Of a stretch of DNA of 64,000 nt, positions 1,413 through 57,536 are shown one piece after another. A program made the translations under genes and the position numbers. Origin of the DNA: Epiperipatus broadwayi (Eukaryota; Animalia; Onychophora); contig JAQFVV010000002.1 of NCBI GenBank assembly GCA_028023455.1, positions 9,238,001-9,302,000 of the forward strand, read 5' to 3'. How positions within the stretch are numbered: position 1 is the stretch's first letter; the number at the start of each line of letters is the position of its first letter. Under the pieces are notes generated by a model that did no database searches, was not told where the DNA came from, and saw only the letters and a list, made by a program, of their open reading frames with translations.

Positions 1413-2868
1413 TTAAACATGGCCTTTAATCAATGTCTGCTGTACTTAATCAAAGTACAATATTTGTTTTATGCTTCTGCAATATTCTCTTCTACAATAG
1501 TGCATGCAATACTTTTTATATTTATTTATCATCAAAGTGAATTTAAAAATTCTTTTCAAAATATAATAATGTGAATTTGTTTGTATATTGATGTATTTAT
1601 GTGTGTTTGTATATATATATAAGAAATCATTATTGCATTTTTACATATTGCCATATGAAATTATATATTTGTAAAGGTATATATATATATATGGATAGCA
1701 TGTAATTTATTTTTATATTGTTTAGTATAGTTGCTATATTTTCATAAGTTATTGAGCATGCTTAAATAAATGTTCATATGTCCTTATATATACATACATA
1801 CAGTGGTGAATCTTTTAATAAACATACACTTTAATAATCATTGTATATTTCTTTTTAAAAGAAATATCTGTATTTAAAACATTATTATGAATTATTAAAA
1901 TTATTATTAAAATGAAAATTATAGCATTATTGCATTTCTAATATGATTTTAGAAAATATAGCTATCTTAAAAATATTTAAAACACTAAACTAAATTTATG
2001 ACTCAAAGACAGTAAAACTAAAGACTTTTATTTTAAAACATTATAATTTTAAAAAGTCAAAACATTCAAATAAAATAATCTTTGTTTTATATAATAAACT
2101 AACAAATATACTGAAAGATATCCTCAAGTGTATTTGAAATGTTATAATAAATTTGAAAAACAGAATTGTAGAAAAAAATAAAAAATGAATTGCATATTAA
2201 TTTTGATTTTTAATATTTCAAACATATTACTTTTTAATTGTTTCAGAATCTTATAAAGTTAATTGAATGATCACTATTAAAATGATTTTCTCATTAACAT
2301 GCAAAATTGTCAGTAAATGCATGTTTATTATATTAAAAATATAAGAAATCGTATATAATTAAACAACATCTATCTACTATGGAATTTAATATAAACTAAT
2401 ATCAATGTTATCAAATATTTTTAGATAACTTTAGAAGCTGAATTAAAATCATGTATCCAGGATCAGTACTTTTTTAAGTCTAACTTTGTCATAAACTGAG
2501 TTAAATATCAAACCTCAGAATAACATTGTTTATATATAAACATTTTGTTGTTTTCATTATTACATAATTCTTTACGAAACATGTTATTAGTCACTATAAG
2601 TCTAAAATTGCTGCCAATCATGGTGCCTTAATATATTGTAACAATCAAACTCAGATAAAAAGTCACTTAATCATGCCCAAGTTAAGTAGTCAAATGTAAC
2701 AATATCCTTTCAGGTAAAAATGATTTATCAGGCCCTAGTTGGGTGGCAAATGTATTTGTCTTTAATGGCTGTAAAGGGAGCTTACAAATGAAAATTAATA
2801 TTTCTTTTAAAATGTTTATTAAGTTGAACATTAAGTAAAATGATAACAAGTAAAAGAAATATAAAAAC

Positions 2869-3007
2869 AGGCAAAACTCTCCATACAGTAGTGCCACTCA
2901 GTGTAAGCCAGAGTAGCTTGCATTGAGTGGCACTACTATATGGAGAGTTTTGCCTAATTTAATAACAGTTATGAGCCAGCATAAGAAATGGTGATCATGT
3001 GATGTTT
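2869..3007. repeat. 40-bp-stem hairpin (2869-2955) built from a dispersed repeat whose other copy is at 51425-51511
   Basis: aggcaaaactctccatacagtagtgccactcagtgtaagc / gcttgcattgagtggcactactatatggagagttttgcct with a 7-nt loop. The right arm plus flank (agcttgca..gtggcactact..ggaga...agaaatggtgatcatgtgatgttt) recurs at 51425-51511. Confidence 0.85.
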
Positions 3008-19916: not shown

Positions 19917-20231
19917 CCCAGAACTACAAACTCTTGCACATACCTTTATATCATTATTCAGTATGTATATATAGATAGCAAACTACTATAGTTTAATTAA
20001 TGTGTCACATTTGCTGCTTTCATAATGTTGATGCAAACCACTTAATGGACCTATATTAATATATTTTACTATTCATTCATTAGACTAGAGATTAATGAAT
20101 AATATTTTTGTAGTGTAATTTTCACTACACTATTCTCATTCAAGGTACGGACTGGTTTTTGTCCACTTTTAACAGTTTATAGAGGGGTGTAATCATATGA
20201 CCAAAGACAATTTGAAAAAGATGTATGATTT

Positions 20232-20273
20232 ACAAGATGCATATTTCATGCTGTACCAGCACTCATCATTTGG
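20232..20273 (-). ncRNA. Degenerate minimal type I hammerhead ribozyme, copy B (357 bp from copy A)
   Basis: ccaa ATGATGA gtgctg gta cagcat GAAA tatgca tc ttgt. Confidence 0.7.
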
Positions 20274-20390
20274 CCCAGACCACAATCTCTTACTCATATC
20301 TTTATATCATTGTTCTGTTAGACTGTAATAGTTTGCTATCTATATATACTGAACAATGATGTAAAGATGTGTTTGAGATTGTGGTCTGGA

Positions 20391-20432
20391 CCAACTGATG
20401 GATGCTATTTCAGCATGAAATTTGCATCTTGG
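20391..20432 (+). ncRNA. Degenerate minimal type I hammerhead ribozyme, copy C
   Basis: ccaa CTGATGG atgcta ttt cagcat GAAA tttgca tc ttgg. Confidence 0.7.
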
Positions 20433-20962
20433 GGATCATTTTCTTTGGTCATATGTTTATAATTGCATACCTCTAAAAGTGGATAAAAACCAGTCCCTAC
20501 CTTGCATGAGAGTGATATATTGAAAATTACACTACAGAAATATTATTCATTATTGGATAATCTTTAGTCTAATGAATGACTAATAAAAATTATTAATGTA
20601 TTCTTTAATTTATATTAACTATTTTTTCTTTTCTGAACAAATAAGTCAGCTACTAGTTTAGAAACATAAAATTATATTAGTTATTCTGTAATTAGAACAT
20701 AAATGTATATATCAGTCATAGAAAGTAAATATTTTGTTCATTTTTTTCAAGGGGCCAAAGAAAATAAATTTATCAGATAAGAAATAATTTAAGTACTATT
20801 CATTGAAATGTTGTACATGTAAAGTACAACTTAAACATTAACATTAACCATAACTCACATATTAATATTTCATACTTATTATTTTCAAAACACATAAATA
20901 ATATAAAATACAGTTGTATTTATATGTTGGACTAAATCCATCATCAAATATGAGTGTTTAAT

Positions 20963-23031
20963 GTTTTTAGAGAAATTTAACTTTATTTAAATATTCCAAA
21001 TACATTCAACTGTTAGTGATAATGCACAAGTTAGTATATGTACAATATTTCAAAAGGTATTATTCTCCCCTCTTCTTCAGATGTTGCTGGCCTGACCAGT
21101 GACAGTACTAGAATAAGAATAGAATCTGGACCCTTAGATTTTTCGAATATTGAATATTAAGGTAACATTTTAACCAACTGAGCTATTCTGCCAAAAGCAA
21201 GTCAGTAGAAATTTCATATACTTATCTATGAGATACCTCCTGATTCCTCCACTCTTTTCTAAGAGCAAAGTTAATTTGTGGTTTCCATACAGTATGTATA
21301 GTTGCACTAGGTTGACATATGGAATTTTTTGCCATTGTCATGAGAACAGCTTCTTTAAATTTTCTTCTTTGTATGTTTTCTTCTCTATCCAATATTTTTG
21401 TATTTTCCCAATTGAACATATGTTCATTGGTACATACAAAGTCTGCTACCTTAGAGATATCTGTTTTCTCTCTTTTAATCGTACATTTGTTCTTGCAAGT
21501 GCTTTTCAATGGGACAACTGGTCTCGCCAATATACATTCTTCCACATTCACTTGGTATTTCATAAATGTATTTTTTTGCTATTCAGCATTTCATGTTTAG
21601 GCTTTGTAGATGTTAGAATTACTTGTAATGTGGTATGGCTCTGAAAAGCTGTTCTGATGTTATACTGATTGCAAATTTTCCTTAATTTGTATGCTATTTT
21701 TGGCATGTAAGAGTACAATACAGTACCAATAATTGTTTTTTTCTTTTGATGGTACTTTTTGTTGTCTATTTAAGGTTTTCTTAATAATGGCTAATGAATA
21801 ATCATTTTTGATAAGTGTTTATTCTTTATAGATCTTTTTTTTTTCAAATCACTTGTTTCTAAAAAAAACTTCTTGTTCTGTTCCATAGTGATAGTATAAC
21901 TCCATGTTTTGTGTTTCTGGTGTAATTGGATGTATAGGCTAAGTATTTTTCTATCTGTGTGAGTTTTTGATAAACTGTAGTTTTGATTTTGCCATGAGGG
22001 AATCTTGTCACAAGAACATCTAAAAATGCTAATATTTGTTCTTTTTCTGATTCTATTATGAATTTAATTGAAGGGTATATGTTGGTGACATGTTTCCAGA
22101 AAGTTTGTGGTTGTGCTTCCCATATGGCCTTACAACAAATGCATCATCTACATAGCGAAGCCAAACTTTAGATGGATATGGAGTAGTTTTTATAGCTGTG
22201 GGTAATGTTCTTCCATGTAAATGTTGCTAATCATGGGTGACAATTATGAGCCCATAGCCATATCTTGATTTTGTTGGAAGAATTCTGTTATATTGAAGTA
22301 GGCTGTTTTTATGCAGAAATGTTAATAGTTCCATTATACTATCAGTAGGAAGAGTTCTGATTTGTAAGCTACTATCACCATTTAATGTTTTCCATACAAT
22401 AAAAAATGGTTCTTCGCATGGTATATTTGTGAATAAACTTTTCACATCAAAGCTTACCAGTAAGTTAGTTCTTTCAATTTTCATGTCCTTGATTAATTCT
22501 ACAAAGTGACTAGAAACCCTGACAAAGGAGTGGGTCTTGTATGCCAAAAGACTTAGAACTTTGAGAAGAAATCTTGACATATTTCTAGAACTATTAATAG
22601 GTCGTAATGGAACATGATCCTTATGGATTTTAGGTAAAACATAAAGGTGAGGAATTTTGTTGGAAATATGATGTTATTTTACTTTTTTCTGTATCACCAA
22701 AGTGCCTGCAGTGCTTTCTAAGTAATGCTTGGAACTTTGTTTTTGTACTCGATATCAGATTTTTTGCCACTTTTCTCTATTGACCCACTATGAGGAGTTC
22801 TTGCATTTTCTTGTCATAATCAGTTATATCCATTACAATAACTGTTGCATTACCTTTGTCAGAAGTGAAAATAATTATGGATTTGTCTTTTTTGATAAAT
22901 TTAATGGCTTTCCTCTTATCATAGAATATGTCTGACTTCAATTTTTGTTACTTCTCAAGTGTTTTTTTTAATTCTCCAGCATAATTCTGCTGCTTCTTCT
23001 AAAGGCAATTTATAAGTGATTTCCTCAATGG
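20963..23031 (-). mobile_element. 5'-truncated Penelope-like element (Penelope/Poseidon type), left arm of the palindrome
   Basis: Minus-strand translation gives SDKGNATVIVMD, LYVLPKIHKDHVPLRPI, LVSFDVKSLFTNIP (RT) and HMFNWENTKILDREENIQRRKFKEA (GIY-YIG C-terminus); multiple stops and frameshifts. Confidence 0.9.
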
Positions 23032-24755
23032 TTGCCTTTAGAAGAAACAGCAGAATTATGCTGAAGAATAAAAAGAACACTTGTCAAGCAACAAAAATTG
23101 AAGTCAAACATATCCCATGGTGAGAGAAAAACAATTATATCCCTCAAAGTCGATAAATCTATAATTATTTTCCCTGATGACAAAAGCAATGCATCAGTTG
23201 TAATGGATACAAGTGTTTATGACATCAAAATACAAGAACTCCTCACAGCAGGCCAATAGAGAAAAATGACAAAAAATCTGATAAGTCACAAGTATTACTT
23301 AGCAAGCAATACAGGTACTTCAATGATACAGAAAAAAGTAAAATAACATCATATTTTAACTAAATTCCTCACCTTTATGGTTTATCTAAAACCCATAAGG
23401 ATCATGTTTCATTATGACCCTATTGTTTTAGAAATTCACCTTGCCAAAATTTGTCAAGATTTCTTCTCAAAGCTCTAAGCCTTTTGGCAAACAAGAGCAG
23501 TCTTTTATGAGGGATTCTAATCATATTGTAGAATTAATCACGATCATGAAAATTGAAAGAACTGACTTATGATAAGTTTCAATGTGGAAAGTTTATTCCC
23601 AAATGTTCTATGTGAAGAAGCATTATATATTGTAAAGAAAAGATTAAATGGTGATAATAGTTTACAAACCAGAACAACTCTTCCTATTGACAGTATAATT
23701 GAACTATTAACATTCTACATTAAAACAACATACTTTCAATATAATACAGAATACTTTCAACAAAATCCAGGAATGGCTATGGGTTCACCATTGTACTCCT
23801 GATTAGCAATATTTACATAGAATAACTTGAAACCACAGCTATAAAATTATTCCATATTCACCTACTTTAGATTTACTATGTGGATGATATATTTGTTGTA
23901 TGGATACTTGGTGAAGGACTATTACATACTTTCTGGAAACACATCAACAACATCTCATCTTCAACTAAATTCACAATAGAATCAGAGCAAAAACAAAAAT
24001 TGACATTCATAGATACTCTTATGACAAGACTCCCTAATCGCAAAATCAAAACTACAGTTTACCAAAAATCCACACATATAGGAAAATACTTATCCTATAC
24101 ATCCAATAACACCAAAAACACAAAACATGAAGTTATAATATCATTATGGAACAGAACAAAAGAAGCTTGTTCAGAAAGCAGTGATTTGGAAAAAGAAAAT
24201 ATCTATATAGAACAAACGCTTATGAAAAATGCTTATCCATCAGCTGTTATTAAGAAAATATTCAATAGACAACAAATAGAACCATCAAAAGAAAAAAAAA
24301 TCAAGGAAAGTCTGAAATCAGTAGTATAACATCAGAACAGCTTCCCAGAACCATACCACACTATGAGGAATTTTAACATCTACAAAACCTAAACTTGAAA
24401 TGCTGAAAAAGAAAAACTGCATCTATGAAATATGTGAATGTGGAAGAACTTATATTAATAAGACTAGTTATCCAATTGAAAAGCACTTGCAAGAACACAA
24501 ACTGAGGATCATACAGATGTGTCTTAGATCAGACATGTATGTGCCAATGAACATATACTCAATTGGGAAAACAAAAATATTGGATAGAGAAGATAAGGTA
24601 CAAAGAAGAAAATTTAAAGAAGCTGCTCACATGGCAATGGCAAACAATCACATAAGTCAATCTAAACCTAATCAATTTTGCTCTTAGGAAAAAGTGGAGA
24701 AATCAGGAGGAATCTTATAAATAAGTATATAAAAATTTTTACTGACTGTTGCCTT

Positions 24756-24840
24756 TGGCAGGATGGCTCAGTTGATTAGAGTGTTACCTTAAAATTCAAT
24801 ACTCAAAGAATCAAGTTCTATTCTCATTCTAGTATTGCCA
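24756..24840 (+). other. tRNA-like segment in the PLE 3' UTR (mirror copy at 21100-21193, minus strand)
   Basis: TGGCAG...TGGCTCAGTTGATTAGAG (A-box/D-arm-like)...GTTCTATTC (B-box-like)...TTGCCA; the ends can pair and finish in CCA. Not a functional tRNA. Confidence 0.5.
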
Positions 24841-24852
24841 CTGATCAGATCA

Positions 24853-24900
24853 GCAACACCTGGAGAAGAGGGAAGAATAAGACCTCTCGAAATATTGTGC
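24853..24900 (+). ncRNA. Hammerhead-like core in the PLE 3' end (mirror copy at 21040-21087, minus strand)
   Basis: CTG(G/A)AGA-agaggg-loop-cctct-CGAAA in the right arm; CTGAAGA...TGAAA in the left arm. Stem I/III partner and cleavage triplet not resolved. Confidence 0.45.
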
Positions 24901-27349
24901 TATTATTTAACAGTTGAATGTAATTGGAATATTTGAATAAAGTTAAATTCACAACTAAAACCCCATCATCACAAACCTTCTGGAAAGTAATATATGCAGT
25001 ACATTTTCATACAATTTTAATATCAAAATAATTATATATGTTTAAAATATCAATCTTAATTACAATGTTTAGATAAGATTACTTTTTCTTAACAAATGTT
25101 TTTATCTAATAATTAATTTGTTATAAAAAGTAATTTATTTAATTGTTTAATTTGATAAACTATAATAATTATAAATAAATAGTTTATAATCAATGTATTT
25201 ATATACTTTGCACTAAAAGTAATTATTTTTCCAACACAATTGGTATATTTATATTTAACTTGAAATAATATCATAAGGTCCAAAAATCAGTTTACTCATT
25301 CTTTTGTGATCCCCCATGCTTTTATTTTAAGTTAAATATAAAAACCCCAAGTAATTAAAAGCATTGAGTATAAAATATTTTTATATCTATTATTATTTAG
25401 TTTTTATTATTCGGATTATAATCAAAGTTGAAAGTAAAATCATAAGCATTAAATGTCTTGTTCACAATATTCTTTTGTTCATCCATCCTCTGCTGTATAT
25501 TTAAAAAAGTAACCTACCTAAGATATTTGTCATTTTGCATCACCAGTAGTGACTTATGAAAAATTACCAAATTTAAACAAATCATAGTGAATATTAATTT
25601 ATAAATTCTTGGATTTTAAATTTTTATTCTAACTTCAGTAAAAGCATTTAACTGAAACAATCATCTAACAATATATATATATGTCCCCCTTTCACACACA
25701 TTGCTGAAATTTTTTATAATTTTTAAGCAACTTATTTTAAATTTGATATCAAAATAGTTCAAATTTTATCTACCCACTGCTCTATATTTAACTTTATCAT
25801 CACACTCAAGCAGTGTGGAAGATTTTAACAATTAAATTTGTGGGTTTTTATCCCCTGGTGAAAATTTTGTGAAACTTTTCTTACGGCTTTAAAATTCATC
25901 TATATTTTCTAATATTTTAGTTACAAAAAAAAATCAAAATATGATGAGAAAATCGAATATCAGTATTATAAAGAAACTTTAACCATTGTTTGATGATTAT
26001 ACATTGTTAATTTGGCAATCATGAACTTTTCCAAGTGTATTTCACGGAAAATTATGATCGCTAAGAAAATATTACAATGGTTTAAAAACTTACTTTTTTA
26101 GAAAAATTATGAATGTATTTGTATCATAAGTGTAAAAATTATTAAAAATAAACAATAAATATTTGTTTTTTACAGAAGTGTTTTATTTTTAAATATAAAA
26201 TTTTTTCTTCTGAATATTGTTACTATAGAGATTATGGTCACAGGAAGACACAGTTTTGTAGGAATGAGATCACTCACCTAATTGTTATTATATTTAGCAA
26301 TATCTTAAAAATTACAAAAAATTCTAAACTTTTAAATCATAAAATGATATATTTAGTAGTTATTAAAAAATGTGTTCAGATTTTTTATCAAACATGAAAC
26401 AAAGAAGATTTCATTCATTTTGCAAGTTGAATCTGTTCAACCTAAAATTTGATGACATATGACAGCATGTTGTTTTTATTAAAATATAATTTTTAAAATA
26501 ATTCCAAAAATAAGATGTGATTTTTTAAAAAAATTATTTAATTTTTAAACAAAAATATTGAATGAGGTCAGATTTATTATATTCTGATAAATAATAATGG
26601 TTTAATATTAAAGTGAAAGTTGAAAGCTTAAATCTAGTGAGAATAAAGAAATCTGTCAAAATACTGGAGGGTTAAGAAATTAATGAATCTATCTAAAATA
26701 TTTTAATGTTACATTGCATTGCCAGTGATTTATATCAAGTGTATCAAATTTAAACAAATTCTTTTGTATATAAATATATTAAATCTCAATTTTAAAATTT
26801 TATTCTAACATAAATAAAAATATTGAATAAAAAATAATTTAATTGACATTTATTTGGATAAATCTTAAATTATTATTGTGAACAAAAAAAAAATAAGAAA
26901 GGTTGGGAACATAGTTAATTATTTATAATTTTTAAAAAAGTAAAAATAAACAGTAATCATGATGATTATTTAAAAAAATTAAAGTAACAATAATATCATT
27001 TGAAGTTTTTAAAAAACTATCCATAATAAAAACTTTTGTAATAGGATTAAAATTTATGAGTAAAAAATGACAGTTCAAAAATTGATGAATCTGGAAAAAG
27101 AAATATGTATTTTTATAGTACTAATTTTGGACCTAAAAAAACGTTGATGAATTTAGAAAAACATTTTATGTGTGCATGATGGATTGAGAATTCATATATT
27201 TTATCATGAATCAACCATGTAAGCACAAATAATCAATAAATATCATATGGTATTGTTTTTGGTTATTGGCCTTCTCATTTGTAAGCCCAATTTTATCTCC
27301 TAAAAGGATTGATGTGAATTGCTGCTGTAATAATGGAGATAAAATGTAA

Positions 27350-33200: not shown

Positions 33201-34473
33201 TTGGATTCTTAAAGAAAAAATAAGACATTTTAAATATATATAAAAAACATATCAAAAAAATTCAAAACTTATTTGAATTTTTTTTTTTTTAATAAATACA
33301 ATAACTTAGCGTGTTAGTATAATTAAACATGATTAGTACTATCCAAAATAAATTTTAGTAATTTATCCAGGATAGTTGTGTTAAAAAATGTTTTAAGAAT
33401 AATTTTTAAAAAATGTTGAAAAATACATTTCTCTACATAGGAGGGCTTTAATTAAACCCCCTTAATAAGTGATTAGGTGGGTCAGACAGTGAAATGGCAA
33501 ATCAGATTTACCATTGCAATAGTTTCAATTTTTTTATTTCTCATAAATTAATTCATATCTCAAAAATAGATTGTCTAAATTAAGCTAAACAATACTACAA
33601 TATTAGTAATGTTATTTTTTTCTATTACAATTTAGTTAACCATTTTATGATTGAGATACTTCACTCTAATAACTGTCATCAATTAAAAATCTTGTATATT
33701 CTTGTTTTTTTTTATTTAGATCATATTTATTATAATTTTAATATAGTCAATATTTATGAATTTTTTTAATTTTTAAAGAGTAAATGTTGTGAATAAATAA
33801 TTTTTAAAAATCTTATATGAATTTTTCTACCCAATATATATTTGTTGTTTTGGTTTTTTTTTAAAAAAAAAAAAAGTTTTGAATATTTGTGCCTTTATTT
33901 TTTTGTCCAGACTCAAGTCATGACTAAATTAATATACAATCGTATAAAAATTAAACGCATGTATATGTTTTCTAGAACATTCACATGCAAAAATTATTGA
34001 AATAATTAGTCATAGACTTATAAGGTAATCTAAAGTCAATTCTTAGCTGTTTTGATGTAATAGATTTTAACTTTTTAAAGTAATGATTGTTTTTGTTTCT
34101 TTCAGTTTTATGAAAAATTAATTGCAGAATAATTGTAAAAATAATTTTTTGCTAGCTAATCTTTAATTTACTGATATGACATAACATTGTTCATGAAAAT
34201 ATTTTTTTTGAAAAGAGCAAATGCCATTTTATTTTTAAAAAAACATAAAATTATTTATTATGAAAGTTAATATATGTAAATATCATTATTATTAATATTA
34301 ATTTGTTACTGCTGTCAGTTTGTGTCATAATTTTTTTAAAATGAAGGTTTCAATATATATATTTATTTTACTTTTAAGTGGTAAATATTAATTTTCAATT
34401 TATGAAGCATTAAATTAAAACAAAGGTAGTAAATCACCCTCCCTCATGCTCTGACTTAAAAGCATTCTAAATA

Positions 34474-34751
34474 TTGAACAAAGGAATCAAGAATAGAATG
34501 AATCCATCTACTCTTGGTAATTCTGATGTTTATAAGCATACCTTTATCAACATTGTTGATAATTTAGAGTGAAATTAATTTATTAACAGATAGAATATGG
34601 TACTTAAAAGTTATTAAATTCACAATTACTTATACAAGGTTGGAGACAGCATCTCACTCTGAATTACCAATAACGTTGACAAAAGTATGCTTATAAACAT
34701 CTGAGCTACCAAGAATAGGTAATTCATTCTATTTTTGATTTGTTTGTTTAA
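34474..34751. repeat. Fold-back with ~100-bp diverged arms and an ~80-bp spacer
   Basis: 34474-34573 (gaatagaatgaat...gatgtttataagcatac...agagtga) is the reverse complement of 34653-34751. Confidence 0.85.
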
Positions 34752-37700
34752 CATTTAGAATGATTTTAAGTCATAGCCAGGTGGAGCATAATTTACTCCC
34801 TTTATTTACATATACATGGAGCTATGTTTAATTTAAAGTTTACATGATATTCTTTATAAATATCTGTTTAATTATTCATTGTTATTTTAAAGCAAATTGT
34901 TTTAAAACTTAAAAATAATTATTGAAATATTTATTCAATAATACAGAAACTGTCATTCAAATAAACATAAAATCATTAAATGTGATTAGGAAAAGTTTAA
35001 TTCTTTTAATTTGTTTATAAATTGTTTGATTCTTATATTAATAACACACTTTAATGACTCAACTATTTACAAAAAAGAAATAGCATATTTAAATTCAGTA
35101 TATATTATTTATCCAAATTTTATATGAATACATAAAATCCTTAATAATATGCTATATTTAATGTACACCAGACATAATATGTTAATATATTCAGTATAAT
35201 ATATTTAATTTAATGTGAGTGAGTAAAAATTAAAATATTTCATTGTAATCAATATTCATCATATTCAGAAAAAAAACATGCAGTTCTCTTCTTGATCATA
35301 ATTTATAGAAAATCTAGCATAATTATTGGATATTAATATACTTGTTACATTATTTATATAAAAAAGTTAATAAGAGCCATTTATTAAGTAATTATATTAT
35401 TAATGGAATATTTATAAATATTCTGCTATTTCCAGATAAATAGAAATTATGTACAACAAAGAAATAGTTTACATTATTGAATTAAAAAGAAAAACATTTA
35501 ATTAATAATTGAATTTTATTAATAAACAAGTAAATAGTAATTCAAATGAATAATTCAATTTTAATATTTAAAAAATCTTTTTTTTCTTCAAATAGTTAAA
35601 TTTTTAAAGCATGGAAAATATTTATATAAGTTTATATCATATTTTTTATTATGTTGATGTCCAAATTAAACTACATTTTTATTTTTCATCTGCCATTTAG
35701 TTTTGTTTTTTATGACAACAGTAAATTCAAAATTGAAAATTTTCATATGAATTCCCAAGTCTATTCATTCAAAAAAAAGTCTATTTAGTCATTTAAATTA
35801 AACTATTGTCTTTAACTTGTCAATTTAGTGCTGAAATATCACTTGATTTCCCAAGTAATTGTCATACATTTATTTTATTGTTCTTGTTAGAATTAGGTAT
35901 TGTTTTTATATAAAAATGCTAGCCTTTCTGTTGTTACTAATTACTTCAAATGAGAACCTTTTATTGTTAATGTTGTTGTCTCAAAAAAAATTATTAATTA
36001 ATTAAATTAATGCACTGCTGTTGATTTAATTAGACGAATTGTTTATAGTGTATAGAATTATTATCTAAAACTATTATAGCATTATTATATATTATTGAGT
36101 ATATACCTTTTTGTTTAAAATATTAACAAATGATTAATCTGTAATTTAATTTATAATATCCATAATCATTTCTTTTACAATTTGTCTTAAAATAAAGATG
36201 TTTGCTTTTTTTTTTTAAAAAATTATGTCGATTGTTTTTTGAATGCATGGATATAATAAATATATAAATTTTAAATAAAATAACGGTTGATATAAATGTA
36301 TTTACTTGCAAAAGTTTGCACTATAGTATATACAAAGAAAAAGAAAGAGAGAGACAGATAAAAAAAATATAAAATCTATAAATGTAATAGCAAGAATTTG
36401 AAAATTATAGTTGATTTACATATTTAAAAAAAGAGAATATATTATATGGAAGCTGAAATTCAGTTTTATTAAATTTAATGTGTCATCATTGTCGTGTAAT
36501 GTGATACTTTTCTCTTTATTTTTTCTTAAAATTTACTTTGATAATGGTGATTGTAATTAAATAATCGAAATATTACTTTTTGTAGGGAATAAAAATAAAA
36601 AACATATATATATGATATTTTTTTTGGTATACTATTTTTATTTTTTCATTGCTTTGGTTTAATAATGAAACAAGTTTTAAAAAATTAAAAAGATGTTATA
36701 TATTAATGCATTCTGTTCATACTCTTCCTTTTATAATCCTGAGCATTATTAATACTATTTCCTTATAGCATTTGTTCATTAATAGTAATTTCTCTTCTAA
36801 GCCTTCCTTCATTAAAAGAAAGATATTAATTATGTATGTGATATATCTGGCCAAAAATAACTACATGTCAGTTGGGTAAAACTGGCTTAATTCATAAGGA
36901 TGTTATTGCACAGGATTTCCAGCTTAAATAACTGACAGTTAAAGAATTACATACTAAAATAACTTTATCGTTATAAATTAAAAATATTATTACATTTATA
37001 TAATAAAAAAAATCCTAAAAGTTTAAATTTTGATGGATACTACAATTGTTGTTTTAACACATTATAATAAATATGGATGAACAATAAAAAATATAGAAAC
37101 AAAGTTATGAATAAAAATTAGGTAAGCACTAGGATTCCACAAAAGTTGAGATTGAGTTTCAAAATTAATATATATATTTAAAAAATATAATGATATATAT
37201 AAAATTTGATAAATGTTAAAACAATAAAATATAGAGCTTAAAATGAAAAAACAAGTATTGCAAACATTGAAATATTAATTTCAAAAAATGAAAATCAAAA
37301 AGAAAATATCCCATTTTTTATTGCACAATTTTTAAGTTGCATCATAAATAAATCATTTTAATACCTAATATTCTTCTGGGTTTCCCTTTCATCTAAGCAA
37401 TATTGCAATGTGAACCTTAATCCAAGAAAATCTTAAAAAGAAAATAGAAAACATTAAATCACTTGAGAAATCATACTTTAATGCAAACATTCCTCTTTAA
37501 CATACCTGCAGTGACAAGAATTGCATATTAATTCCTCATAACATTGTACACCATCTTTACTAAACACATTTAATTACTATGCAGAAAACTTAATTTGGGA
37601 TAAATGCACAGAAACCATTTCAATTAAACATTTACAAAAATCCACTTGCTCTCAATAACTAGAATTACATAATATATACACATTAAGAATACAAAAAGCA

Positions 37701-38446
37701 TTTAACATAATTTTATTATGTTATAATACCCTTCCACAATCTAGAGATCATTTGTAAAATTACAACTACTGACCGACTCTTCCCAATATAAAAATATTTA
37801 ATAACTTTTGAAACTTCTATTATCTATTTATAACCTTCATTTTTGTTTCCTCTAAATATAAATATTGAGAGATGCATTCATTGCTTTATCTGCCATCCCA
37901 ATATGGAAAAAAACTCATATTAAACATCCCCAATAAACAACTATAACACAAACTTAAATGCTGATCACTAAACCCCAAATATTTTGGCTTTTTAATAAAA
38001 CTAAACTTAGGATCCTTGCCCATAGTACACTGCTATAGATTTAAAGAACACAAATTTAGAAGTTCAGTATACTTTTTATCACAAAAATATTGAAATAATA
38101 ATTAACTCAGTGAACATAGATTTTGTGAGCAGCTAATCTTTGTTTTCAATCATCTCTTTCTTTCTGTGCGGATTTCCTCATTGTATACCTTCTCATGAAT
38201 GATATATCAAATACTAAACAAAAATTGTTTTTCCAAAATCACATTTCTTTTGGTTCTTATATGTTTTATATATCACAATCTCTAATAGGAATTTATTCTG
38301 TCTTTTCCACACACATTCTCATATATACAACACCATTTTTTTTTAGAAATTTTGAAAGGGTTTGCTTATTTGTAAATAAGACAATTAATCAATCTTAATT
38401 TATATACATTATATGATACATGAATATCTGTATGGTTATATATATA

Positions 38447-39242
38447 TATAGACTTTCAAGGCTCCTTTAATCTATCCATTCTTTCTCATGCAACTGATAC
38501 ATAAGATCAGCTACTTGTGAAAAAAAAAGATCTCCATTACACATATTTTGTGATGAACCAGCATTCATTAGTTGGTCCAGATCATCATCTACCATACACA
38601 TATATAATTAGTGCTCAGTTTATATTAAGAGAGCAAATCTTCAAACTTTAATGGACAGACTTCAATCTACTCCTCCTTCCAACTCATCAGCCATCCATAG
38701 CATTGAAAATCTGATTATAGAATGTCCAATTCTCTTGTTAATGCTAATATTGTCATGTTCATGTTGACTTTAAATCAGTCTGACCCCTCATGTATAGGAT
38801 CTTTGTCCATTTAAATACATTTGTAATACATTTAAATATTACAAATTCAGCCTGTATCTTCTCCAGCCCTCTTCTGTGTATTTAAATGGTGAGATCTTAC
38901 ACATGCAGGATCAGACTGACCTAATGTTAACATGGGCATGACAATAATATTAGCATTAACAAGGAATCTGGACATTCTATCATCAGATTTTCAATTATAT
39001 GGATGGATAAAGAGTTGGAGAGTGGAGTAGATTAAAGCCAGTCCATTAAAGTTTGAAGATTTGCTCTCTTAATATAAAGTGAGCACTGATTATATATATA
39101 TGTGGGGGGGGGATGATCTGGACCAACTGATGAGTGCTGGTTCAGCATATTGGGGATTATTTATTCTTTTCACATGTATGTGGTCTTATGTCTCGATCAT
39201 ATGAGATAGAGTGGATAGCAGAAGTGAGATTGAAAATCTATA
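38447..39242. mobile_element. Fold-back element with ~370-bp arms, each containing the same hammerhead family as 19.7-20.6 kb
   Basis: Arms 38447-38820 and 38877-39242 are inverted. Cores at 38534-38575 (-: ccaaCTAATGAatgctggttcatcacAAAAtatgtgtaatgg) and 39123-39153 (+: ccaaCTGATGAgtgctggttcagcat, GAAA segment deleted, then ttgg). Confidence 0.85.
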
Positions 39243-41829
39243 TTCAAATACCGTATATTACACCTAAACTCCCGAGTTAATTATTTTTGTATTTAAATAT
39301 TATGTATATATAAAATGCCAATGATGCAATTTAATTTAAAATTTATACATGTGTGAATGAGAATGGCATAAATGTGTTTATTCATTTATCCTTTTCAAAA
39401 CAAATATTTATTTAAGCACATAAAGAAAGCATTTCGTAGTTTTTCTTAGATTATTATTGATTAAGAATCATTTGAGTATTTATAGAACTATTTATTACTT
39501 GAAATAAGCACTGTTTATACATACCTATGATACAATTTAATTTAAAATTATATGTCAATAAAAATAATTAACATAAAAATAAAATAATGTAGCTATGAAA
39601 AAAATTATAGTAATAAGCTGAGAAAAATAGATTAGATTCATATTTACTCAAATCTATTCCTTTCATGGTTAAATCGGTTATTTTTATTTTATCATATAGA
39701 ATTTCCATCATCATTAACTTAGAGCTTTGGACCATATTTTAAAAATATTTATTTAATAATTTATGGAAATAATACAAGAAATATATTAACTGTGAATGCA
39801 ATCATATGATAGACTGAATATATTCTGGATTCATGACATCATTCGTGTAGGCATGTGCACACCAGAAATCTATAAATTCAAGTTTATAAATTTGTAAGTT
39901 TTTCAATTTTTATTATCTTCAAACTGCAGAAGGCAGAATTGTGGATACATAAAAGACAACTATATTACAAAGTAATTTTTCTTAAATACTAATAGTGAGA
40001 AAAATAACCCACATTTATTCACTGGATCATAAAGTTTAATTACCTATAGCAAATATGTTTCCTAATCCCAAGAGTTTTTAGCATTCAGATTTTGAGATTT
40101 AAATTTTAGTAGTGCAGTTTTTCAATATGCTCTTTTCATACTCAAAATAAAAACAATCAAGATATTTATAAAATTATATAATCCATCTTTCCATTGAATA
40201 AGGCCTAGTATAGTTCATTCATAAAATGTTATAGTTGTTGAACTTGATAAATCAGTGAATATTTTTTAGTTCTGAGGATTTATGTTTTTTACTTTTTTAA
40301 TCTGGAAGTTATAGGTTTCATTATATTATCATAAATTTGATCACATCCTTTTATATAAAGATATAGTAAATTTTGGAAATCACATATTCCTCTTCTTTTT
40401 TTTTTGTTGACACATATAAATTTCAAAAATTTTTATGTAAAAAAAAAAAAAACAACTAATTTTTATTTGGATAAATCAAAAAATAAAACTTTTTTTTTGC
40501 TTTCGCCAGTACATAAAAAAGGCATCTGTTTTTAATATAAATATTCAACATAATCTCCAAAAAACTATATATAGTATTGGTTCATGTTGTTGATTTTATC
40601 TGAGATTTTAGTTGTTTCTAAAGTCATTTATGTAACACCCCCATTATCAATTTACATGAATTGTTTTACTACATTCAAACATTTTTGAACATTCATAATT
40701 TTTGTTTATTTTTGCCATCACAAATTATGATGTCTTCTGATCATAAAAATTCTAAATATGACATACATCCAATAATATTATACCAATAGTGCTAGCAATA
40801 CTGAAAAATTATATACAGATAGTAATATAAAGAGTGGCAGCTGCTCCACAAGCATTGTGGCATCCCCCAAAAAATTAATTATTAAATTTATTCTTGAAAA
40901 ATCAATATATATATATAACAATTATTCAATATTTTACATAATTATTTTATGTAAATAAAATTAATTAAACCATTTTTAAAAATAATTATGTAAATGATAT
41001 TTGAGATTTTATTCAAAAATGTTACTAATTATAGCAGTTCCAGAAATCTCATATTCAATAAATTTCAGAAAGTTTCACTGAGATTGGTTTGTTTTTTTCA
41101 ATACTCATAACTAATGCCATTGGGTGCTTGTTCTGGCAGAATCAATAGCTATTTGAGCATGGTATGTTTATTCTGATTTCAGAATGAATAAATTTTTTAT
41201 TGTTTTCATTTAGGATGAACAATAAAATATTATTTTCTTTTTTGTACTTAACATTTGTAAATTAACATAAATATTTATTGCAGAAAAATATACCAAAATA
41301 AAAAAAATATTACTTTAAATATTTTATCATGATAAGGTTAGTTAAAAATTATATTTTTCCATTTGTCCTTACGTGAAAACATTGAAATGAAAAATAAAAA
41401 TCAATCTACTTCAAATATTATTATTTATCAAATAATAGTTAGTAAAATGGTTATGTGGTTGCAAAATTAGAAATGCTTTGTGTTTTCCTTGTTTACTTTT
41501 GGTGACGATACTGTAATAAAGCATCCTTGCTTAAAAATTTCATGGACCACCTCTGAATATAAACTTGTTCAGTTCTAATTATATTGTGTTAGTGATAATT
41601 AAGTGAATGACATTTGCACTTTAGTTAGTTTTATTTAACAATTTGCTATTATTACCCACCACCATTATTTATGGACACATCATATTATTAAAAGTAAGAT
41701 TAGTTAATGTATGTTTCTAACCTATTTTATATATTTAAGATATAAAATGTATTGATTTTTATTTATGCCTTGACAATTGTATAAAAAATTGCAAATTTCT
41801 ATTCAAAAAAAAAAATTTACTATACACAT

Positions 41830-52790: not shown

Positions 52791-55700
52791 GTAAGTATTT
52801 GAAAAATGTGAAACTTCCAAAAGTTAGTAAATTTAAAAAGTTGACTGTTTATATTTTACTTTTAATATTTATTTATTTGAATTTTTAAAAAAAGTTTTAT
52901 ATAAACTGAAGTTTTTTATAGAATATTGTATCCTTTTGAAAATACCAGGTCTAAAAATTGAAGTAATTAGATGTCTCTCTCTCTCTCTCTTTATATATAT
53001 ATGTATATTGTATACTATAAATAGAAAATAAACACCTTTCTGCTTGTAGGACTGGTTATTCATTATCGAAAAGTAGCATATGTTTCCAAATTAGCTAAAA
53101 TATAGGAATTTTTTGTTAAGTATACAACAATCTATAACACATTTAACAAATATAGTTATATTTTAATGAAAGATCTGATCAAATCTTGTATTGAAATCCT
53201 TTTTTTTTTTTACCAATCATTTTAAATCTTTCTAGAAATGTTAAAACTATATTTTAAAGAATTAATAATAATAAAAAAAGAAGATAGATATTGGAAAACA
53301 GAATCAGAAACATTTTTATTGTTTTTCTGATTGCAGGACCAAAAAAAGCAAATGATTAAAAAAAATTAATATCTGTAGAAATAATGAATAGAGATTTCAT
53401 TACATTTTCAAAATATATAGATATTGTTCATGCACTTGAAATAATATCATTTTTAAATGATTTTCAAAAAAGGAATAAGATTAATATTTTGTTTTTTAAA
53501 TATAGAAAATTACAAGAAAAATTATAAATTAAAAGTAAAGATAGCAAATATAAAAAACAAAAAATACTCATAACTTATACATTTTAGTTTTTAAAAAAAA
53601 ACATATATTGGAATAAAATGGAAGTAATTAAAAATGAAAATTCTCAATATCTTTGTCAATCAATTATTTTTTCACTTTTAAAACTATTTGATACAGAGTG
53701 GCAGCACACACATTTTAAATTAAATTATTAAATACTGAAAGCCAAATATAAATCATAGAGAAATGATGTAAAAAAGTGAATATTTGACCATAGCAAATTG
53801 GCACAGTGATGTCTCTAGTTTACATTCAATTATTTTCACTTGCAGTTAATCTCACATCATTCAATTCATGAGACATTCATATAATTAATAAGCACTGACT
53901 AATAATGCCAAATTTTAAGAGACCCAATATAATAAATCCACTTACCATTTCCATCATCTAAAATTTAAGAGATATTTTTGTCGTATTTTTTTGCCTTAAG
54001 TCTGGACCAACATGGAAATATGCTCTAATGGAAAATTATTACCTAATATCAAATTATTTTAATGGATGTTTTCCTCCAAAATATCTGTTTTCCTTGAAAT
54101 ACTAAGAAAATGTACTTAGAAAACTTTTTATCAAATATAGATGGACAGTATTTTGAAGGGATTTTGAATGATTTACTTTTATGCTATATGGAGTACAGCA
54201 TAGAGAGAAAAAAATTTTTGTTGAAACTTTTTGTTGTTAATAGAAATAGCGCAAGCTCTTTTTTTTTTCATTGGTGGAGCTGGAGGAAAGAAAGCCAACA
54301 AGAACTTTACTTAGCTTTAAATTTTATTATTTTTCTATATTTTTTTAATATTCATATTTTTAGAATATGCAATTTAATATATTCTAGAAATAAGCTCAGT
54401 TTTAAGATTTAAATGATTTATTTTTAAATAAAGAAAAATAATAGGTATCAGAAAAATTTAGTTTTTCCGAAAGGTAAATATAAAAAAAATACCTATAACT
54501 TGTTATATGTTTGTATGACCATGAAGAGAGTGGAATCACCATATTTAATTCCAATAATTGTTGGGATTAAAGGTAAATTATTATGCCATTTAATAATATT
54601 TTAATGTATATTTTGTTTGTTTATTATATTACTTGATTATTAAAACCAGATGGAATCATGTTTATATGATTAAGAATATGTTGTCTTCTGAATGTAATAG
54701 AAAGTTAAAAAAATACTGTGTGTTGTTTTCTGAATGCAAAATACCATGTGTGTTATCTAAAGGTATTTAAATAATTTTATGAATGCTTAAGTATGCACAT
54801 CTTTAAATATAATTAGGAGTTACCAAGATATCATTCTAGACAGTATCTGTTTAGATACAATAAATGAAAATGCTGATCTCTGAATTATTTAATATGATAA
54901 TATAAGTGAATGAATGTGTGATAAAGATGGATTTTATGAAATCATTTGTGTATACAATGTTTTTGCACCTTCTTGATTTTAATATTAGATATTATTTTAA
55001 AATGTAGTTTGGTGATTATTTTATGTAAAGTAGTCAGAATTTATTTGTGATGTCAAGAATGTGGAAGATAAAGGATAGTCATCTGGGAAATTAGTTTTAA
55101 AACAAAATCCTGGGTGATAGGGATATTGAGTAGAAATATATTTGAATTATATTTTCACGAAGTAATGAATTAAATACAGGTAACAAAGTTCATGACCGGA
55201 ATTTAAGGTACATGATAAATATGTGACTATAAACACTGCAACCATGATATTTCATATTAGTTTGAGTTATTGTTATATTCATATCCCTCACTGTAATCAC
55301 TATTGATCACCACTGGATATTACATCATGAATGGTACAGTTTAAAAGTTGGTCAGAACAATCGCTGGACTGTAGAAGATTGTTAGTATTTATTAATGCAA
55401 GAGGACAAAAATTTTATCACAAATGATTTATATTGTTTTTATGGGTAAAGATAAAAGGAATGGTTTGATATTTCTAGAGATATATGAATAATGGAGATTA
55501 TTAAACTGATATGTTAAATGCATATTTTTGTTTGAGTGAAAGATAATGGAATACAACATCTAAATGCTATTATGATGATAGATATTGAAATAAATAAATA
55601 AAGTATATTCAAGCAATATATAATTATTTAATATCTGAATATTTTATAAGTAAAGTGAACTTAACAAAAATTAAAGTTATGGAGTTATTTAAGTATTTTA

Positions 55701-56559
55701 TAGCAAATAACTTATAAAGTATAAAGGAAGTTATTACATTATATTTTCTTTATTTTCTTTTATACTAGAATATTAAAATATACTTAAAAGGTAAAGGTAA
55801 ATACTTTTGTTGGTATATAAACGATATACTTAGTATCTTAAGGATAATTTTATATGTTGAATTTTTAATAAGTATTAAACTTAGTTTAAATTTATAGTAT
55901 TGATAGGCATTACTATAATAATAATTTTCTTTTGGAAATATGAAGTTTACTATAGATATAAATGATAATGTAAGTAACTTGTATTCATTACTGTTAATGT
56001 TTTATTTAAGTATGATAGTGATGATGGAATATTGCTATCACAATTATAATCTCTTATATAATTTTATACAGTAAAGTCAAGAGTGAAGGGTATTTAATAT
56101 TTTATTATTTTCATAGTATCTCTTATGTAAATAAATATATTAATTTAATTAAGTTTTTGTTGTTATTTTGTAAATGTTAAAATTTTATAAATTTACATTT
56201 TTTGTAAATTTAAATATGTTGTTAAATAATAAAATTGTTAATGTTTTTTGTAATTCATATTGTCTTAAATGTTTTTTTGTTTGATGTGTCCAAGTGTTCT
56301 TGAATCTTTGTATTCACACATATGAGTTATAAAAATTATTTGTATCATTATATTACTGCACATGGTTAACAAGAATATATTATTACAATTATCATTATTA
56401 TTATAGAAGAGTTTATTAAATTTGCTAATTATGAAGATTATATAACACCAATTTTTAAAATTATCTAATATTACAATTATATTAAGAGTATGATGTTTCT
56501 GTAAATGCCACATAAGAATAAAAGATTTTATATCATAATATGATATACAGTGTTTTAGA

Positions 56560-56900
56560 ATTTATTAAAAATATTCTATATGGTGTTTTTATAAGAATTT
56601 ATAATGTTATTTATGTTTATTGAAGAGTAGTAGTTGAGTAAATGTATTATTTTAAGAATCATGAAAATATTCTAGTTGTTCATTATTGTTTTGGAAGAGT
56701 AGTTGAATATATGTAAAATCCCTCATTACATTTAGCTACGTTGTATTAATTTGTTTATCATTATTATTAGGAAATGAACCTGAGATATTGAATAATTATA
56801 AGAGTTAAATGAAGTGATGATGGATTGGAATTTTTAGTTAATGTTAAATTTAAATATTATCTTTCATGAAGAAATAGCAATTGCTTTATTGTTTCATAAT
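56560..56900 (+). pseudogene. Decayed SF3 helicase (NS1-like) domain; mirror copy at ~57925-58280 on the minus strand
   Basis: Two-arm consensus reads FIKNILYGVF..NVIYVY[decayed Walker A, reconstructed as G.SS.GK]YYFKNLENILVVHxCFGRVVEY..CIN..III..NEPE (Walker B)..GKEFLANVKFK (B')..CFIVS(N) (motif C). Order and spacing resemble densoviral NS1, but frameshifts are needed. Confidence 0.5.
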
Positions 56901-57406
56901 AAATTTTATAAATTATTTAATTAGGATTTATTTTATGTGTGTTGTGAGCAATGAGAATATTACAAGATAGTTTATTTATATAAATAAATTATGGATAATA
57001 TTTTTATGCCATTGATAGTATATCTTTCGGGATACATTCTCAATGTTAAACCAACAATGTACCTCGCTAAATGTCTCATGCAAAGTTTCATAATTTTTTT
57101 GTTAGTATTTTAATCAAACCATATTTTAGTAGTAAATAATGAGCTAGTCATAGTTTAAATTGTTATTATAATAAATGATTTTTGAATCCAATTTGAAATT
57201 TAGTATTTAATTTATGTGTTTTGACTTTCTTAGTTTATTATTTAAATAAGATAAATTATTGAAATATTACTTTGTTAGATATAGTATGTTAAAAATGCAT
57301 TCTGAGTTAAAGTATTGCTTTAATAATAAATATTGTTTTAATAATTCAATTGTGATTTGAAATATAATAGCTAGAGTTTAGCTGGAGAGTTTTCCAATGT
57401 TAGCCA

Positions 57407-57536
57407 GAATGAATCTAGGTTAGCTTTAATTCGGTAAGGGTATAGTGTTAGTGGGTTTTGGCATCCAACACATGGTGTCAAGACCCACTAACACTGAACC
57501 CTTGCTTCCTTACTATAATAAGGAAACTCACCAAAT
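57407..57536. other. Branched hairpin at the axis of the large palindrome
   Basis: 30-bp stem 57436-57465/57474-57503 with an 8-nt loop; 7-bp stem ttcctta/taaggaa at 57506-57525; GC-richer than the arms. Confidence 0.85.

What the first reader, a model, noticed from the sequence alone, without database searches (positions are those of the whole stretch)
20931..24971. 4-kb head-to-head Penelope palindrome with a snap-back junction
Seen: two 5'-truncated copies diverge from a 22-nt spacer (23010-23031). The spacer continues the left arm's frame (A-T-I-E-E-I-T-Y-K-L-P), so it is native element sequence, and its end (TTGC) is complementary to GCAA at the left-arm end. A degenerate direct repeat flanks the structure (actaaatccatcatca at 20931; actaaaaccccatcatca at 24954). 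Inference: one insertion event in which the truncated cDNA folded back on 4-5 nt of microhomology and copied itself, rather than two independent insertions. PLEs are known for inverted termini, but a fully symmetric 2-kb fold-back is unusual.
Basis: partly seen in the sequence, partly recalled or inferred. Interest (0 to 1): 0.8.

Follow-up and report, generated by a model that had tools for sequence, protein, structure and literature searches.

The report
Old head-to-head Penelope retrotransposon pair
Two decayed, 5'-shortened copies of a Penelope-like retrotransposon lie head to head as an imperfect 4-kb palindrome; this is the published, still unexplained way these elements insert, so it is a clear but ordinary example.

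Summary
The palindrome is real. The left arm is 20974-23008 (element on the - strand) and the right arm is 23032-24949 (+). Both arms are dead copies of a Penelope-like element (PLE) and cover about residues 206-801 of an 834-aa PLE ORF.

The spacer continues the left copy's reading frame and encodes a conserved PLE motif; only 2 of 4638 random 23-mers from the window scored as well.

The claimed target-site duplication does not hold. A match that good arises in 16-26% of random flank pairs. Both "flanks" also look like repeat-family sequence, and the two 16-18-mers can pair as the halves of an AC-rich stem-loop.

The claim "unusual" is wrong. Head-to-head inverted 5'-truncated copies, junction palindromes and a self-priming model are published for PLEs (PMC3846280, PMC8557442). 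This window holds three more fold-back repeats, and the scan has noted many Penelope palindromes elsewhere in this genome.

One insertion event made both arms (about 0.85). The near-equal arms favour fold-back of the first cDNA. Priming from both cut DNA ends (PMC11167929) gives the same junction and cannot be excluded.

No other copy of this family could be fetched, so the microhomology, the sister status of the arms and the true ends remain untested.

The parts
20912..20973 (-). Sequence beyond the left arm's 3' end. It is probably still repeat-family DNA (a 3' extension or tail) rather than unique flank.
   Evidence: the bin 20900-21036 has the highest summed depth of the whole stretch in X1, X5 and X9. 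Nine X16 contigs begin their fit at 20912 and are preceded by a 30-nt consensus that matches the reverse complement of the right flank at 28 of 30 positions.
20974..23008 (-). Left arm: a dead, 5'-truncated PLE copy. The 3' UTR lies at about 20974-21260 and the ORF remnant at about 21270-23008.
   Evidence: alignment with the right arm. (tblastn to the 834-aa PLE ORF P0001, residues 244-801, at least 5 frame changes).
23009..23031 (-). 23-nt spacer. It is native coding sequence that continues the left copy 5'-ward. Together with 23032-23035 it encodes A-T-I-E-E-I-T-Y-K.
   Evidence: I-E falls on the nearly invariant [IV]-E column of 13 full-length PLE ORFs; profile score 4.1 bits, reached by 2 of 4638 random 23-mers from the window.
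23032..24949 (+). Right arm: a dead, 5'-truncated PLE copy. The ORF remnant runs to about 24690 and the 3' UTR covers 24690-24949.
   Evidence: (P0001 residues 238-789, at least 4 frame changes, several stops).
24950..24987 (+). AC-rich 38-nt stretch beyond the right arm's 3' end; a candidate PLE 'tail'.
   Evidence: X9 contigs run on to 24986 and diverge there, and the X16 loose-end consensus is its reverse complement (28 of 30). Length and composition fit the published 30-40 bp tail (PMC11167929). It occurs once in the window.
22840..22860 (-). N-terminal PLE motif DKGNATV in the left arm. The right-arm counterpart, DKSNASV, is at 23179-23199 (+).
23877..23888 (+). RT active-site motif YVDD in the right arm. 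The left-arm counterpart is at 22143-22154 (-).
   Evidence: Homologues carry Pfam RVT_1.
24421..24468 (+). GIY-YIG endonuclease motif remnant in the right arm (IYEI ... YINKTS). The left-arm counterpart is at 21517-21567 (-) (IYEI ... YIGETS).
   Evidence: The homologue P0145 carries Pfam GIY-YIG.
23257..23259 (+). In-frame TAG shared by both arms (left copy at 22777-22779, -), at a Tyr column conserved in most of the aligned PLE ORFs.

Best explanation
One retrotransposition event of a Penelope-like element (RT plus GIY-YIG endonuclease) laid down both arms.

Inferred order of events:
1. The first cDNA was primed at the left cut end and copied the element RNA from its 3' region up to about ORF residue 206.
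2. Its 3' end (...TTGC) paired with GCAA 27 nt back on the same strand.
3. Synthesis then continued on the cDNA itself. This produced the right arm and left 23 nt of native sequence as the loop.
4. The structure was opened and fixed between the two target ends.
5. Both arms have since decayed independently, by about 7-8% each.

Shown: the palindrome, the PLE identity, the native spacer, and the independent decay of the arms. Inferred: the single event, and the fold-back itself, which I prefer only because the arms are nearly equal in length.
For: - Arms of 2035 and 1918 nt stop within 23-27 nt of the same element position, with no foreign DNA between them. Two independent truncation points in an element of roughly 3 kb would fall that close about 2% of the time.
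- The spacer is native and contiguous with the left arm.
- The high-identity arms both end at the position where 286 other family contigs also end (20979). The outer ends are therefore element 3' ends and not arbitrary breakpoints.
- Frameshifts coincide with arm-to-arm indels, so they arose after the duplication.
- Of the 40 best-supported sites where the window differs from the family, 31 are private to one arm and the other arm keeps the family base; 5 are shared.
- A relative-rate test shows no clear age difference: 55 versus 36, p=0.06; 36 versus 26, p=0.25.
- Three more fold-back repeats with near-equal arms lie in this window.
- Self-priming at palindromic junctions was proposed for PLEs in PMC3846280.
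Against: - The junction sequence is equally predicted if two cDNAs primed from the two cut ends anneal by their terminal TTGC/GCAA. A purified PLE protein cuts and extends both strands in vitro (PMC11167929).
- If the 38 nt beyond the right arm are element sequence that the left copy lacks, the right arm cannot be a plain copy of the left cDNA.
- The copy is old (K2P 0.164), so the centre may have been reshaped by a later deletion.
- First-stage readers notice symmetric palindromes, so the symmetry is partly a matter of ascertainment.
- No TSD brackets the structure convincingly.
Confidence: 0.45

Rival explanations
1. One event with two primers. The PLE protein cut both target strands and each 3' end primed its own cDNA on element RNA. 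The two cDNA 3' ends, ...TTGC on the top strand and ...GCAA on the bottom strand, then annealed, and each was extended on the other.
For: - In vitro, a purified PLE protein cleaves and extends both top and bottom strands and starts reverse transcription at two internal sites about 30-40 nt apart. This explains a 'tail' at only one end (PMC11167929).
- Here the right end carries a 38-nt AC-rich extension that the left end lacks in that form.
- The typical published PLE insert has an inverted copy shorter than its partner, which two independent primings explain (PMC8557442).
Against: Two independent cDNAs have no reason to stop within 27 nt of each other after about 2 kb. That would need a shared stop site, a shortened template RNA, or tightly coupled polymerases, and none of these is shown.
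Confidence: 0.35
2. A host-level DNA rearrangement. Either a single old PLE copy was duplicated in inverted orientation by break repair or replication template switching, or an originally longer palindrome lost its centre by deletion, which created the present 23-nt asymmetry.
For: - Palindrome centres are unstable, and microhomology such as GCAA/TTGC is typical of repair joints (general knowledge).
- Both arms share an in-frame TAG.
- The copy is old and full of indels, including ones of 48 and 14 nt.
Against: - Both high-identity arms end at the family's usual 3' end and do not run into flanking DNA. Similarity of the flanks in inverted orientation is at chance level, P about 0.10.
- The same architecture recurs for other elements in this window and, by the scan's notes, across the genome.
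- The shared TAG was not flagged as deviating from the family, although neighbouring sites 4-13 nt away were. It is probably a family trait.
Confidence: 0.08
3. Two independent insertions. A second copy landed exactly at the 5' end of an older truncated copy, in the opposite orientation.
For: The family is extremely abundant (106,600 contigs at 80% or more in one run). PLE endonucleases are reported to target their own sequences (PMC11167929).
Against: - It needs zero intervening DNA together with truncation points only 23-27 nt apart.
- There is no sign of different subfamilies or ages.
- The recurrence of symmetric fold-backs argues for a mechanism, not coincidence.
Confidence: 0.05

Closest known systems
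Canonical endonuclease-containing Penelope-like elements with an adjacent inverted 5'-truncated copy (Evgen'ev & Arkhipova; Arkhipova et al. 2013, PMC3846280; Craig et al. 2021, PMC8557442)
   Same: [quoted passage not shown]
- Heavy 5' truncation.
- Two copies head to head, with a short palindromic junction.
- A possible 30-40 nt tail at one end.
- An AT-rich target.
   Different: - There is no direct partial tandem (pseudo-LTR) and no longer partner copy. The insert is only two nearly equal truncated arms.
- No hammerhead ribozyme is recognised by Rfam.
- The TSD is not demonstrable.
Two-strand cleavage and extension by the Anolis PLE protein PAc, with internal RT start sites in an AC-rich stem-loop (PMC11167929)
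   Same: The 3' extensions are AC-rich. The extension differs between the two ends.
   Different: Nothing was tested biochemically here. The stem-loop was assembled from pieces of two different arms plus a 30-nt read consensus. The start sites are inferred only from where the similarity ends.
L1 twin priming (5' inversion of LINE-1 insertions; recalled from general knowledge, not checked here)
   Same: A second priming event during one retrotransposition gives two segments in opposite orientation, joined by microhomology.
   Different: Twin priming inverts a different, adjacent part of the element, so the two segments are not copies of each other. Here the arms are copies of the same 2 kb.
Hairpin self-priming by reverse transcriptases during cDNA synthesis (classical second-strand artefact; general knowledge)
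   Same: The cDNA 3' end folds back on a few complementary bases and copies itself, leaving a short native loop.
   Different: It is known from in vitro reactions with RNase H-containing RTs. It has not been shown for a PLE RT or at a chromosomal target.

Membership tests
Penelope-like elements (endonuclease-containing, C-terminal GIY-YIG) | PLE-type reverse transcriptase | tested here: met
   The 149-aa piece 23880-24326 hits 5578 proteins. The best is an 834-aa ORF (E 2e-24) that carries Pfam RVT_1. Both arms are colinear with its residues 238/244-801 and contain YVDD. Pfam did not match the short ORF pieces themselves.
Penelope-like elements (endonuclease-containing, C-terminal GIY-YIG) | GIY-YIG endonuclease C-terminal to the RT | tested here: met
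   Both arms align to the C-terminal block of the homologues (IYEI...YIGETS on the left, IYEI...YINKTS on the right). The homologue P0145 carries Pfam GIY-YIG.
Penelope-like elements (endonuclease-containing, C-terminal GIY-YIG) | Conserved N-terminal domain with the DKG motif | tested here: met
   DKGNATV at 22840-22860 (-) and DKSNASV at 23179-23199 (+), aligned with the nearly invariant DKG column of the full-length ORFs that cover this region.
Penelope-like elements (endonuclease-containing, C-terminal GIY-YIG) | Pseudo-LTR (partial direct tandem) | tested here: not met
   No direct repeat of element sequence lies in or around the insert. The literature describes this feature as frequent, not obligatory.
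Penelope-like elements (endonuclease-containing, C-terminal GIY-YIG) | Adjacent inverted 5'-truncated copy (head to head) | tested here: met
Penelope-like elements (endonuclease-containing, C-terminal GIY-YIG) | Hammerhead ribozyme in the terminal repeat / 3' region | tested here: inconclusive
   Rfam gives no hammerhead hit, even at E up to 10 on the 3' UTRs. By eye, the left arm has CUGAAGA-stem-GAAA starting at 21080 (-), followed by a palindromic UGUACA; the right arm has CUGGAGA. Minimal PLE hammerheads may escape the Rfam models.
Penelope-like elements (endonuclease-containing, C-terminal GIY-YIG) | 30-40 bp tail at one end, and a short TSD | tested here: inconclusive
   A 38-nt AC-rich extension lies on the right (24950-24987). 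The left extension is 27 or 62 nt, depending on the reading. The TSD candidate is at chance level.
Fold-back (self-primed) insertion | Equal arms, a loop native to one arm, and microhomology at the turn | tested here: met
   The arm 5' ends lie 23-27 nt apart, the loop is native (p about 4e-4), and the pairing is 4 nt. Whether GCAA is ancestral is not testable with these tools.
Fold-back (self-primed) insertion | The second arm contains nothing that the first arm lacks | tested here: inconclusive
   The right arm is followed by 31-38 nt that other genomic copies also carry and that the left end lacks. The evidence that this stretch is element sequence rests on a few contigs.

The most novel reading that the evidence does not exclude
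In this genome, Penelope-type elements and their non-coding dependants may insert systematically as symmetric fold-backs whose turn sits on a few self-complementary bases of the nascent cDNA. With more than 100,000 family fragments, a census of young copies (arm-length difference, loop length, microhomology, which end carries the tail) could decide between self-priming and two-end priming. That is the open question of the PLE integration mechanism.
Probability: 0.3. Interest if true: 0.5.

Novelty: new member of a known kind. Interest (0 to 1): 0.25.

Why it matters
How Penelope-like elements integrate is still unresolved; the field calls the tandem and inverted structures products of "still undefined features" of the transposition cycle (PMC8557442). 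A 5'-truncated pair with nearly equal arms and a native loop is the kind of product that self-priming predicts. This copy is old, its ends are blurred, and by itself it cannot separate the models. Its value is as one data point in a genome that appears to hold very many such inserts.

Tried and rejected
- Pfam on six ORF pieces gave no hit. Identity was established through full-length homologues instead.
- The search for homologous proteins with the 149-aa piece gave nothing at E<=1e-10. The collection seems to hold no ORFs of this family in that length range.
- The look-up of encoding contigs for the best homologue returned a 2.6-kb contig of a distant PLE (about 40% amino-acid identity), useless at the DNA level.
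- A metagenome scan with a 21-nt pattern from the DKG region returned 45 loci. None is similar to the arms at the DNA level; one (L041) holds a distant PLE.
- The window holds no third copy of the family.
- Read laying at 80% likeness showed the family's abundance. The printed rows include no contig bridging 23009-23031 and none running through the truncation point on the left copy. The 'opposite strands' joints listed lie at mirror positions and are alignment switches between the arms, not real junctions.
- ARAGORN and Rfam do not recognise the tRNA-like and hammerhead-like parts of the 3' UTR. The miRNA hits at 22969-23071 are only the palindrome centre.
- Assembly artefact was rejected, because the arms differ at 15% of sites.
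- The protein-level relative-rate test is noisy because of frameshifts.
- I built no family consensus and no repaired frame.
Full report
**What is there.** An inverted repeat spans 20974-24949. A gapped alignment of the reverse complement of the left side with the right side gives arms 20974-23008 and 23032-24949. There are 1609 matches and 275 mismatches (85.4% identity) and 52 indels, including ones of 48 and 14 nt. Kimura distance is 0.164, with 172 transitions and 103 transversions. Identity is even along the arms at 80-88% per 200 nt, so there is no sign of gene conversion. The two arms are the only copies of this sequence in the 64-kb window. At 15% divergence this cannot be an assembly fold-back artefact.

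**What the arms are.** The window is 24.6% G+C and strongly CpG-depleted (observed/expected 0.21). Both arms are dead genes with several frame changes and stops each. The 149-aa piece 23880-24326 finds 5578 proteins. The best is an 834-aa ORF (P0001, E 2e-24) with Pfam RVT_1, and a related 882-aa hit also carries Pfam GIY-YIG. Both arms are colinear with P0001 residues 238/244-801. They carry:
- the N-terminal DKG motif;
- YVDD;
- the thumb block KIKTTVYQK;
- the GIY-YIG block IYEI...YIGETS.

This is a canonical endonuclease-containing Penelope-like element (PLE). About the first 205 codons and the 5' UTR are missing from both copies. The sense strands point outward, so the copies are head to head.

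**The spacer.** On the minus strand the frame runs K-A-T-I-E-E-I-T-Y-K-L-P-L-E-E from 23038 into the left arm. In an alignment with the full-length PLE ORFs that cover this region, the spacer-encoded I-E falls on a nearly invariant [IV]-E column (I or V in all 13; E in 12 of 13). The spacing to the DKG motif is also the same as in P0001. I built a profile of that region from 13 ORFs and replaced the spacer with random 23-mers from the window. Only 2 of 4638 replacements reached the observed score. The next codon upstream (Lys, read from the right arm's antisense) does not fit the hydrophobic column of the homologues, so native sequence ends about where the right arm starts. The Ala codon GCA fits that column (Ala in 3 of 13), but this cannot show that GCAA is ancestral.

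**Relation of the arms.** The frame changes in each arm coincide with arm-to-arm indels, so they arose after the arms separated. The read lay lists 40 best-supported sites where the window differs from nearly all family contigs. At 31 of them the other arm keeps the family base, 5 are shared by both arms, and 4 show a third base. Both arms therefore descend from something close to the family's common sequence, and most of their mutual divergence is private decay. A protein-level relative-rate test against P0001 gives 55 derived changes on the right and 36 on the left (p=0.06). Against the column majority it gives 36 versus 26 (p=0.25). This shows no clear age difference, though the test is noisy. 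Both arms share an in-frame TAG at a Tyr column conserved in most of the aligned ORFs (22777-22779 and 23257-23259). It was not flagged as deviating from the family, although sites 4-13 nt away were, so it is probably a family trait.

**The ends and the claimed TSD.** The 16/18-nt direct repeat exists, but a match that good occurs in 16% of shuffles and 26% of random pairs of window segments. The DNA beyond both arm ends also does not behave like unique flank:
- The bin 20900-21036 has the highest depth of the stretch in three of the four runs.
- Nine contigs that begin their fit at 20912 are preceded by a consensus that equals the reverse complement of the right flank at 28 of 30 positions.
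- Contigs of another organism run on to 24986 before diverging.

I joined the left extension and the right extension in sense orientation. Because the arms are inverted, the two halves of an element hairpin look like a direct repeat. This recalls the AC-rich stem-loop in which a purified PLE protein starts reverse transcription at two sites 30-40 nt apart, the origin of the PLE "tail" (PMC11167929). This reading rests on few contigs and on a composite sequence. The alternatives are a real TSD in a repeated target with a 27-nt tail on the left, or tails on both arms; I could not exclude either. 286 family contigs end at 20979, so the high-identity arm ends coincide with the family's usual 3' end.

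**How common this is.** One DNA run holds 106,600 contigs at 80% identity or more to the stretch. The window holds three more fold-back repeats, with arm identities of 81-84%:
- 20052-20600, loop 29 nt;
- 34418-34807, loop 75 nt;
- 38446-39243, loop 57 nt.

It also holds a 6.7-kb palindrome at about 53987-60633. The scan's earlier notes list 51 Penelope-palindrome findings in this genome, including a perfect 1.59-kb-arm PLE palindrome. I did not check those notes.

**What is known.**
- Craig et al. 2021 describe an inverted 5'-truncated copy adjacent to the element, a 30-40 bp tail at one end, and "complex tandem/inverted" insertions as hallmarks of PLEs.
- Arkhipova et al. [quoted passage not shown]
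- Frangieh et al. 2024 show cleavage and extension of both target strands in vitro.

**Mechanism.** A single event is well supported (about 0.85):
- there is no DNA between the copies;
- the truncation points lie 23-27 nt apart after 2 kb (about 2% by chance);
- the outer ends sit at the family's 3' end;
- decay of the two arms is comparable;
- the architecture recurs.

The route is open. Under fold-back, the top-strand cDNA ending in TTGC pairs with GCAA 27 nt back and copies itself. Under two-end priming, the two cDNA 3' ends anneal by the same 4 nt. The products are identical. The near-equal arm lengths favour fold-back. The in vitro data, and the possibility that the right arm carries 31-38 nt of element sequence that the left lacks, favour two-end priming. 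I put fold-back at 0.45, two-end priming at 0.35, a host rearrangement or central deletion at 0.08, and independent insertions at 0.05.

**What failed.** No other copy of this family could be fetched from the protein collections or the metagenome contigs. The arm-sister test, the DNA-level test of GCAA and the empty-site test therefore remain undone. Rfam and ARAGORN do not recognise the hammerhead-like and tRNA-like parts of the 3' UTR.

**Verdict.** This is a real, old, ordinary example of the known head-to-head insertion mode of Penelope-like elements. The TSD and the claim of unusualness do not hold.

Noticed in passing
window 20052-20600, 34418-34807, 38446-39243: Three more fold-back repeats with near-equal arms (267/253, 158/157 and 374/367 nt), loops of 29, 75 and 57 nt, and arm identity of 81-84%, close to the PLE pair. 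None is similar to the PLE arms by blastn. Rfam finds no hammerhead in them, although CUGAUGA motifs occur in the third.
   Followed up: partly
window 53987-60633: A large imperfect palindrome of about 6.7 kb with 85-92% complementary blocks. I did not examine it.
   Followed up: no
window 22777-22779 (-) and 23257-23259 (+): Both arms share an in-frame TAG where most of the aligned PLE ORFs have Tyr. The read lay did not flag it as deviating from the family, so the family, or its abundant subfamily, may carry an in-frame stop, as reported for several rotifer Penelope families.
   Followed up: partly
window 24757-24840 (+) and 21110-21195 (-): The PLE 3' UTR holds a decayed tRNA-like module (GGCAG.ATGGCTCAGTTG.TTA...). 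Other genomic copies read GGTTCGATTCC (a T-arm) where both arms have decayed. ARAGORN and Rfam do not call it. It suggests a 3' end shared with the tRNA-headed SINEs noted elsewhere in this genome.
   Followed up: partly
window 21040-21080 (-) and 24866-24900 (+): A hammerhead-like core by eye: CUGAAGA, a 5-bp stem, GAAA, then a palindromic UGUACA on the left arm. The right arm reads CUGGAGA. There is no Rfam hit.
   Followed up: partly
window 20974-21015 and 24908-24949: The outermost 42 nt of the arms are 95% complementary, clearly better kept than the rest (85%). This would fit a 3'-terminal recognition sequence, or a chance fluctuation.
   Followed up: no
whole window: 24.6% G+C and CpG observed/expected 0.21. 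Arm-to-arm differences are transition-rich (172 versus 103), consistent with methylation-driven decay of repeats.
   Followed up: partly
window 2860-2964: A 105-nt hairpin (84% self-complementary) gives sub-threshold miRNA-family hits in Rfam (mir-2804, 39.8 bits against a gathering score of 86). It is probably another small fold-back repeat.
   Followed up: no
L041:109-1370: A metagenome contig picked up by the 21-nt pattern carries the N-terminal half of a distant PLE ORF (29-39% identity to P0001).
   Followed up: no
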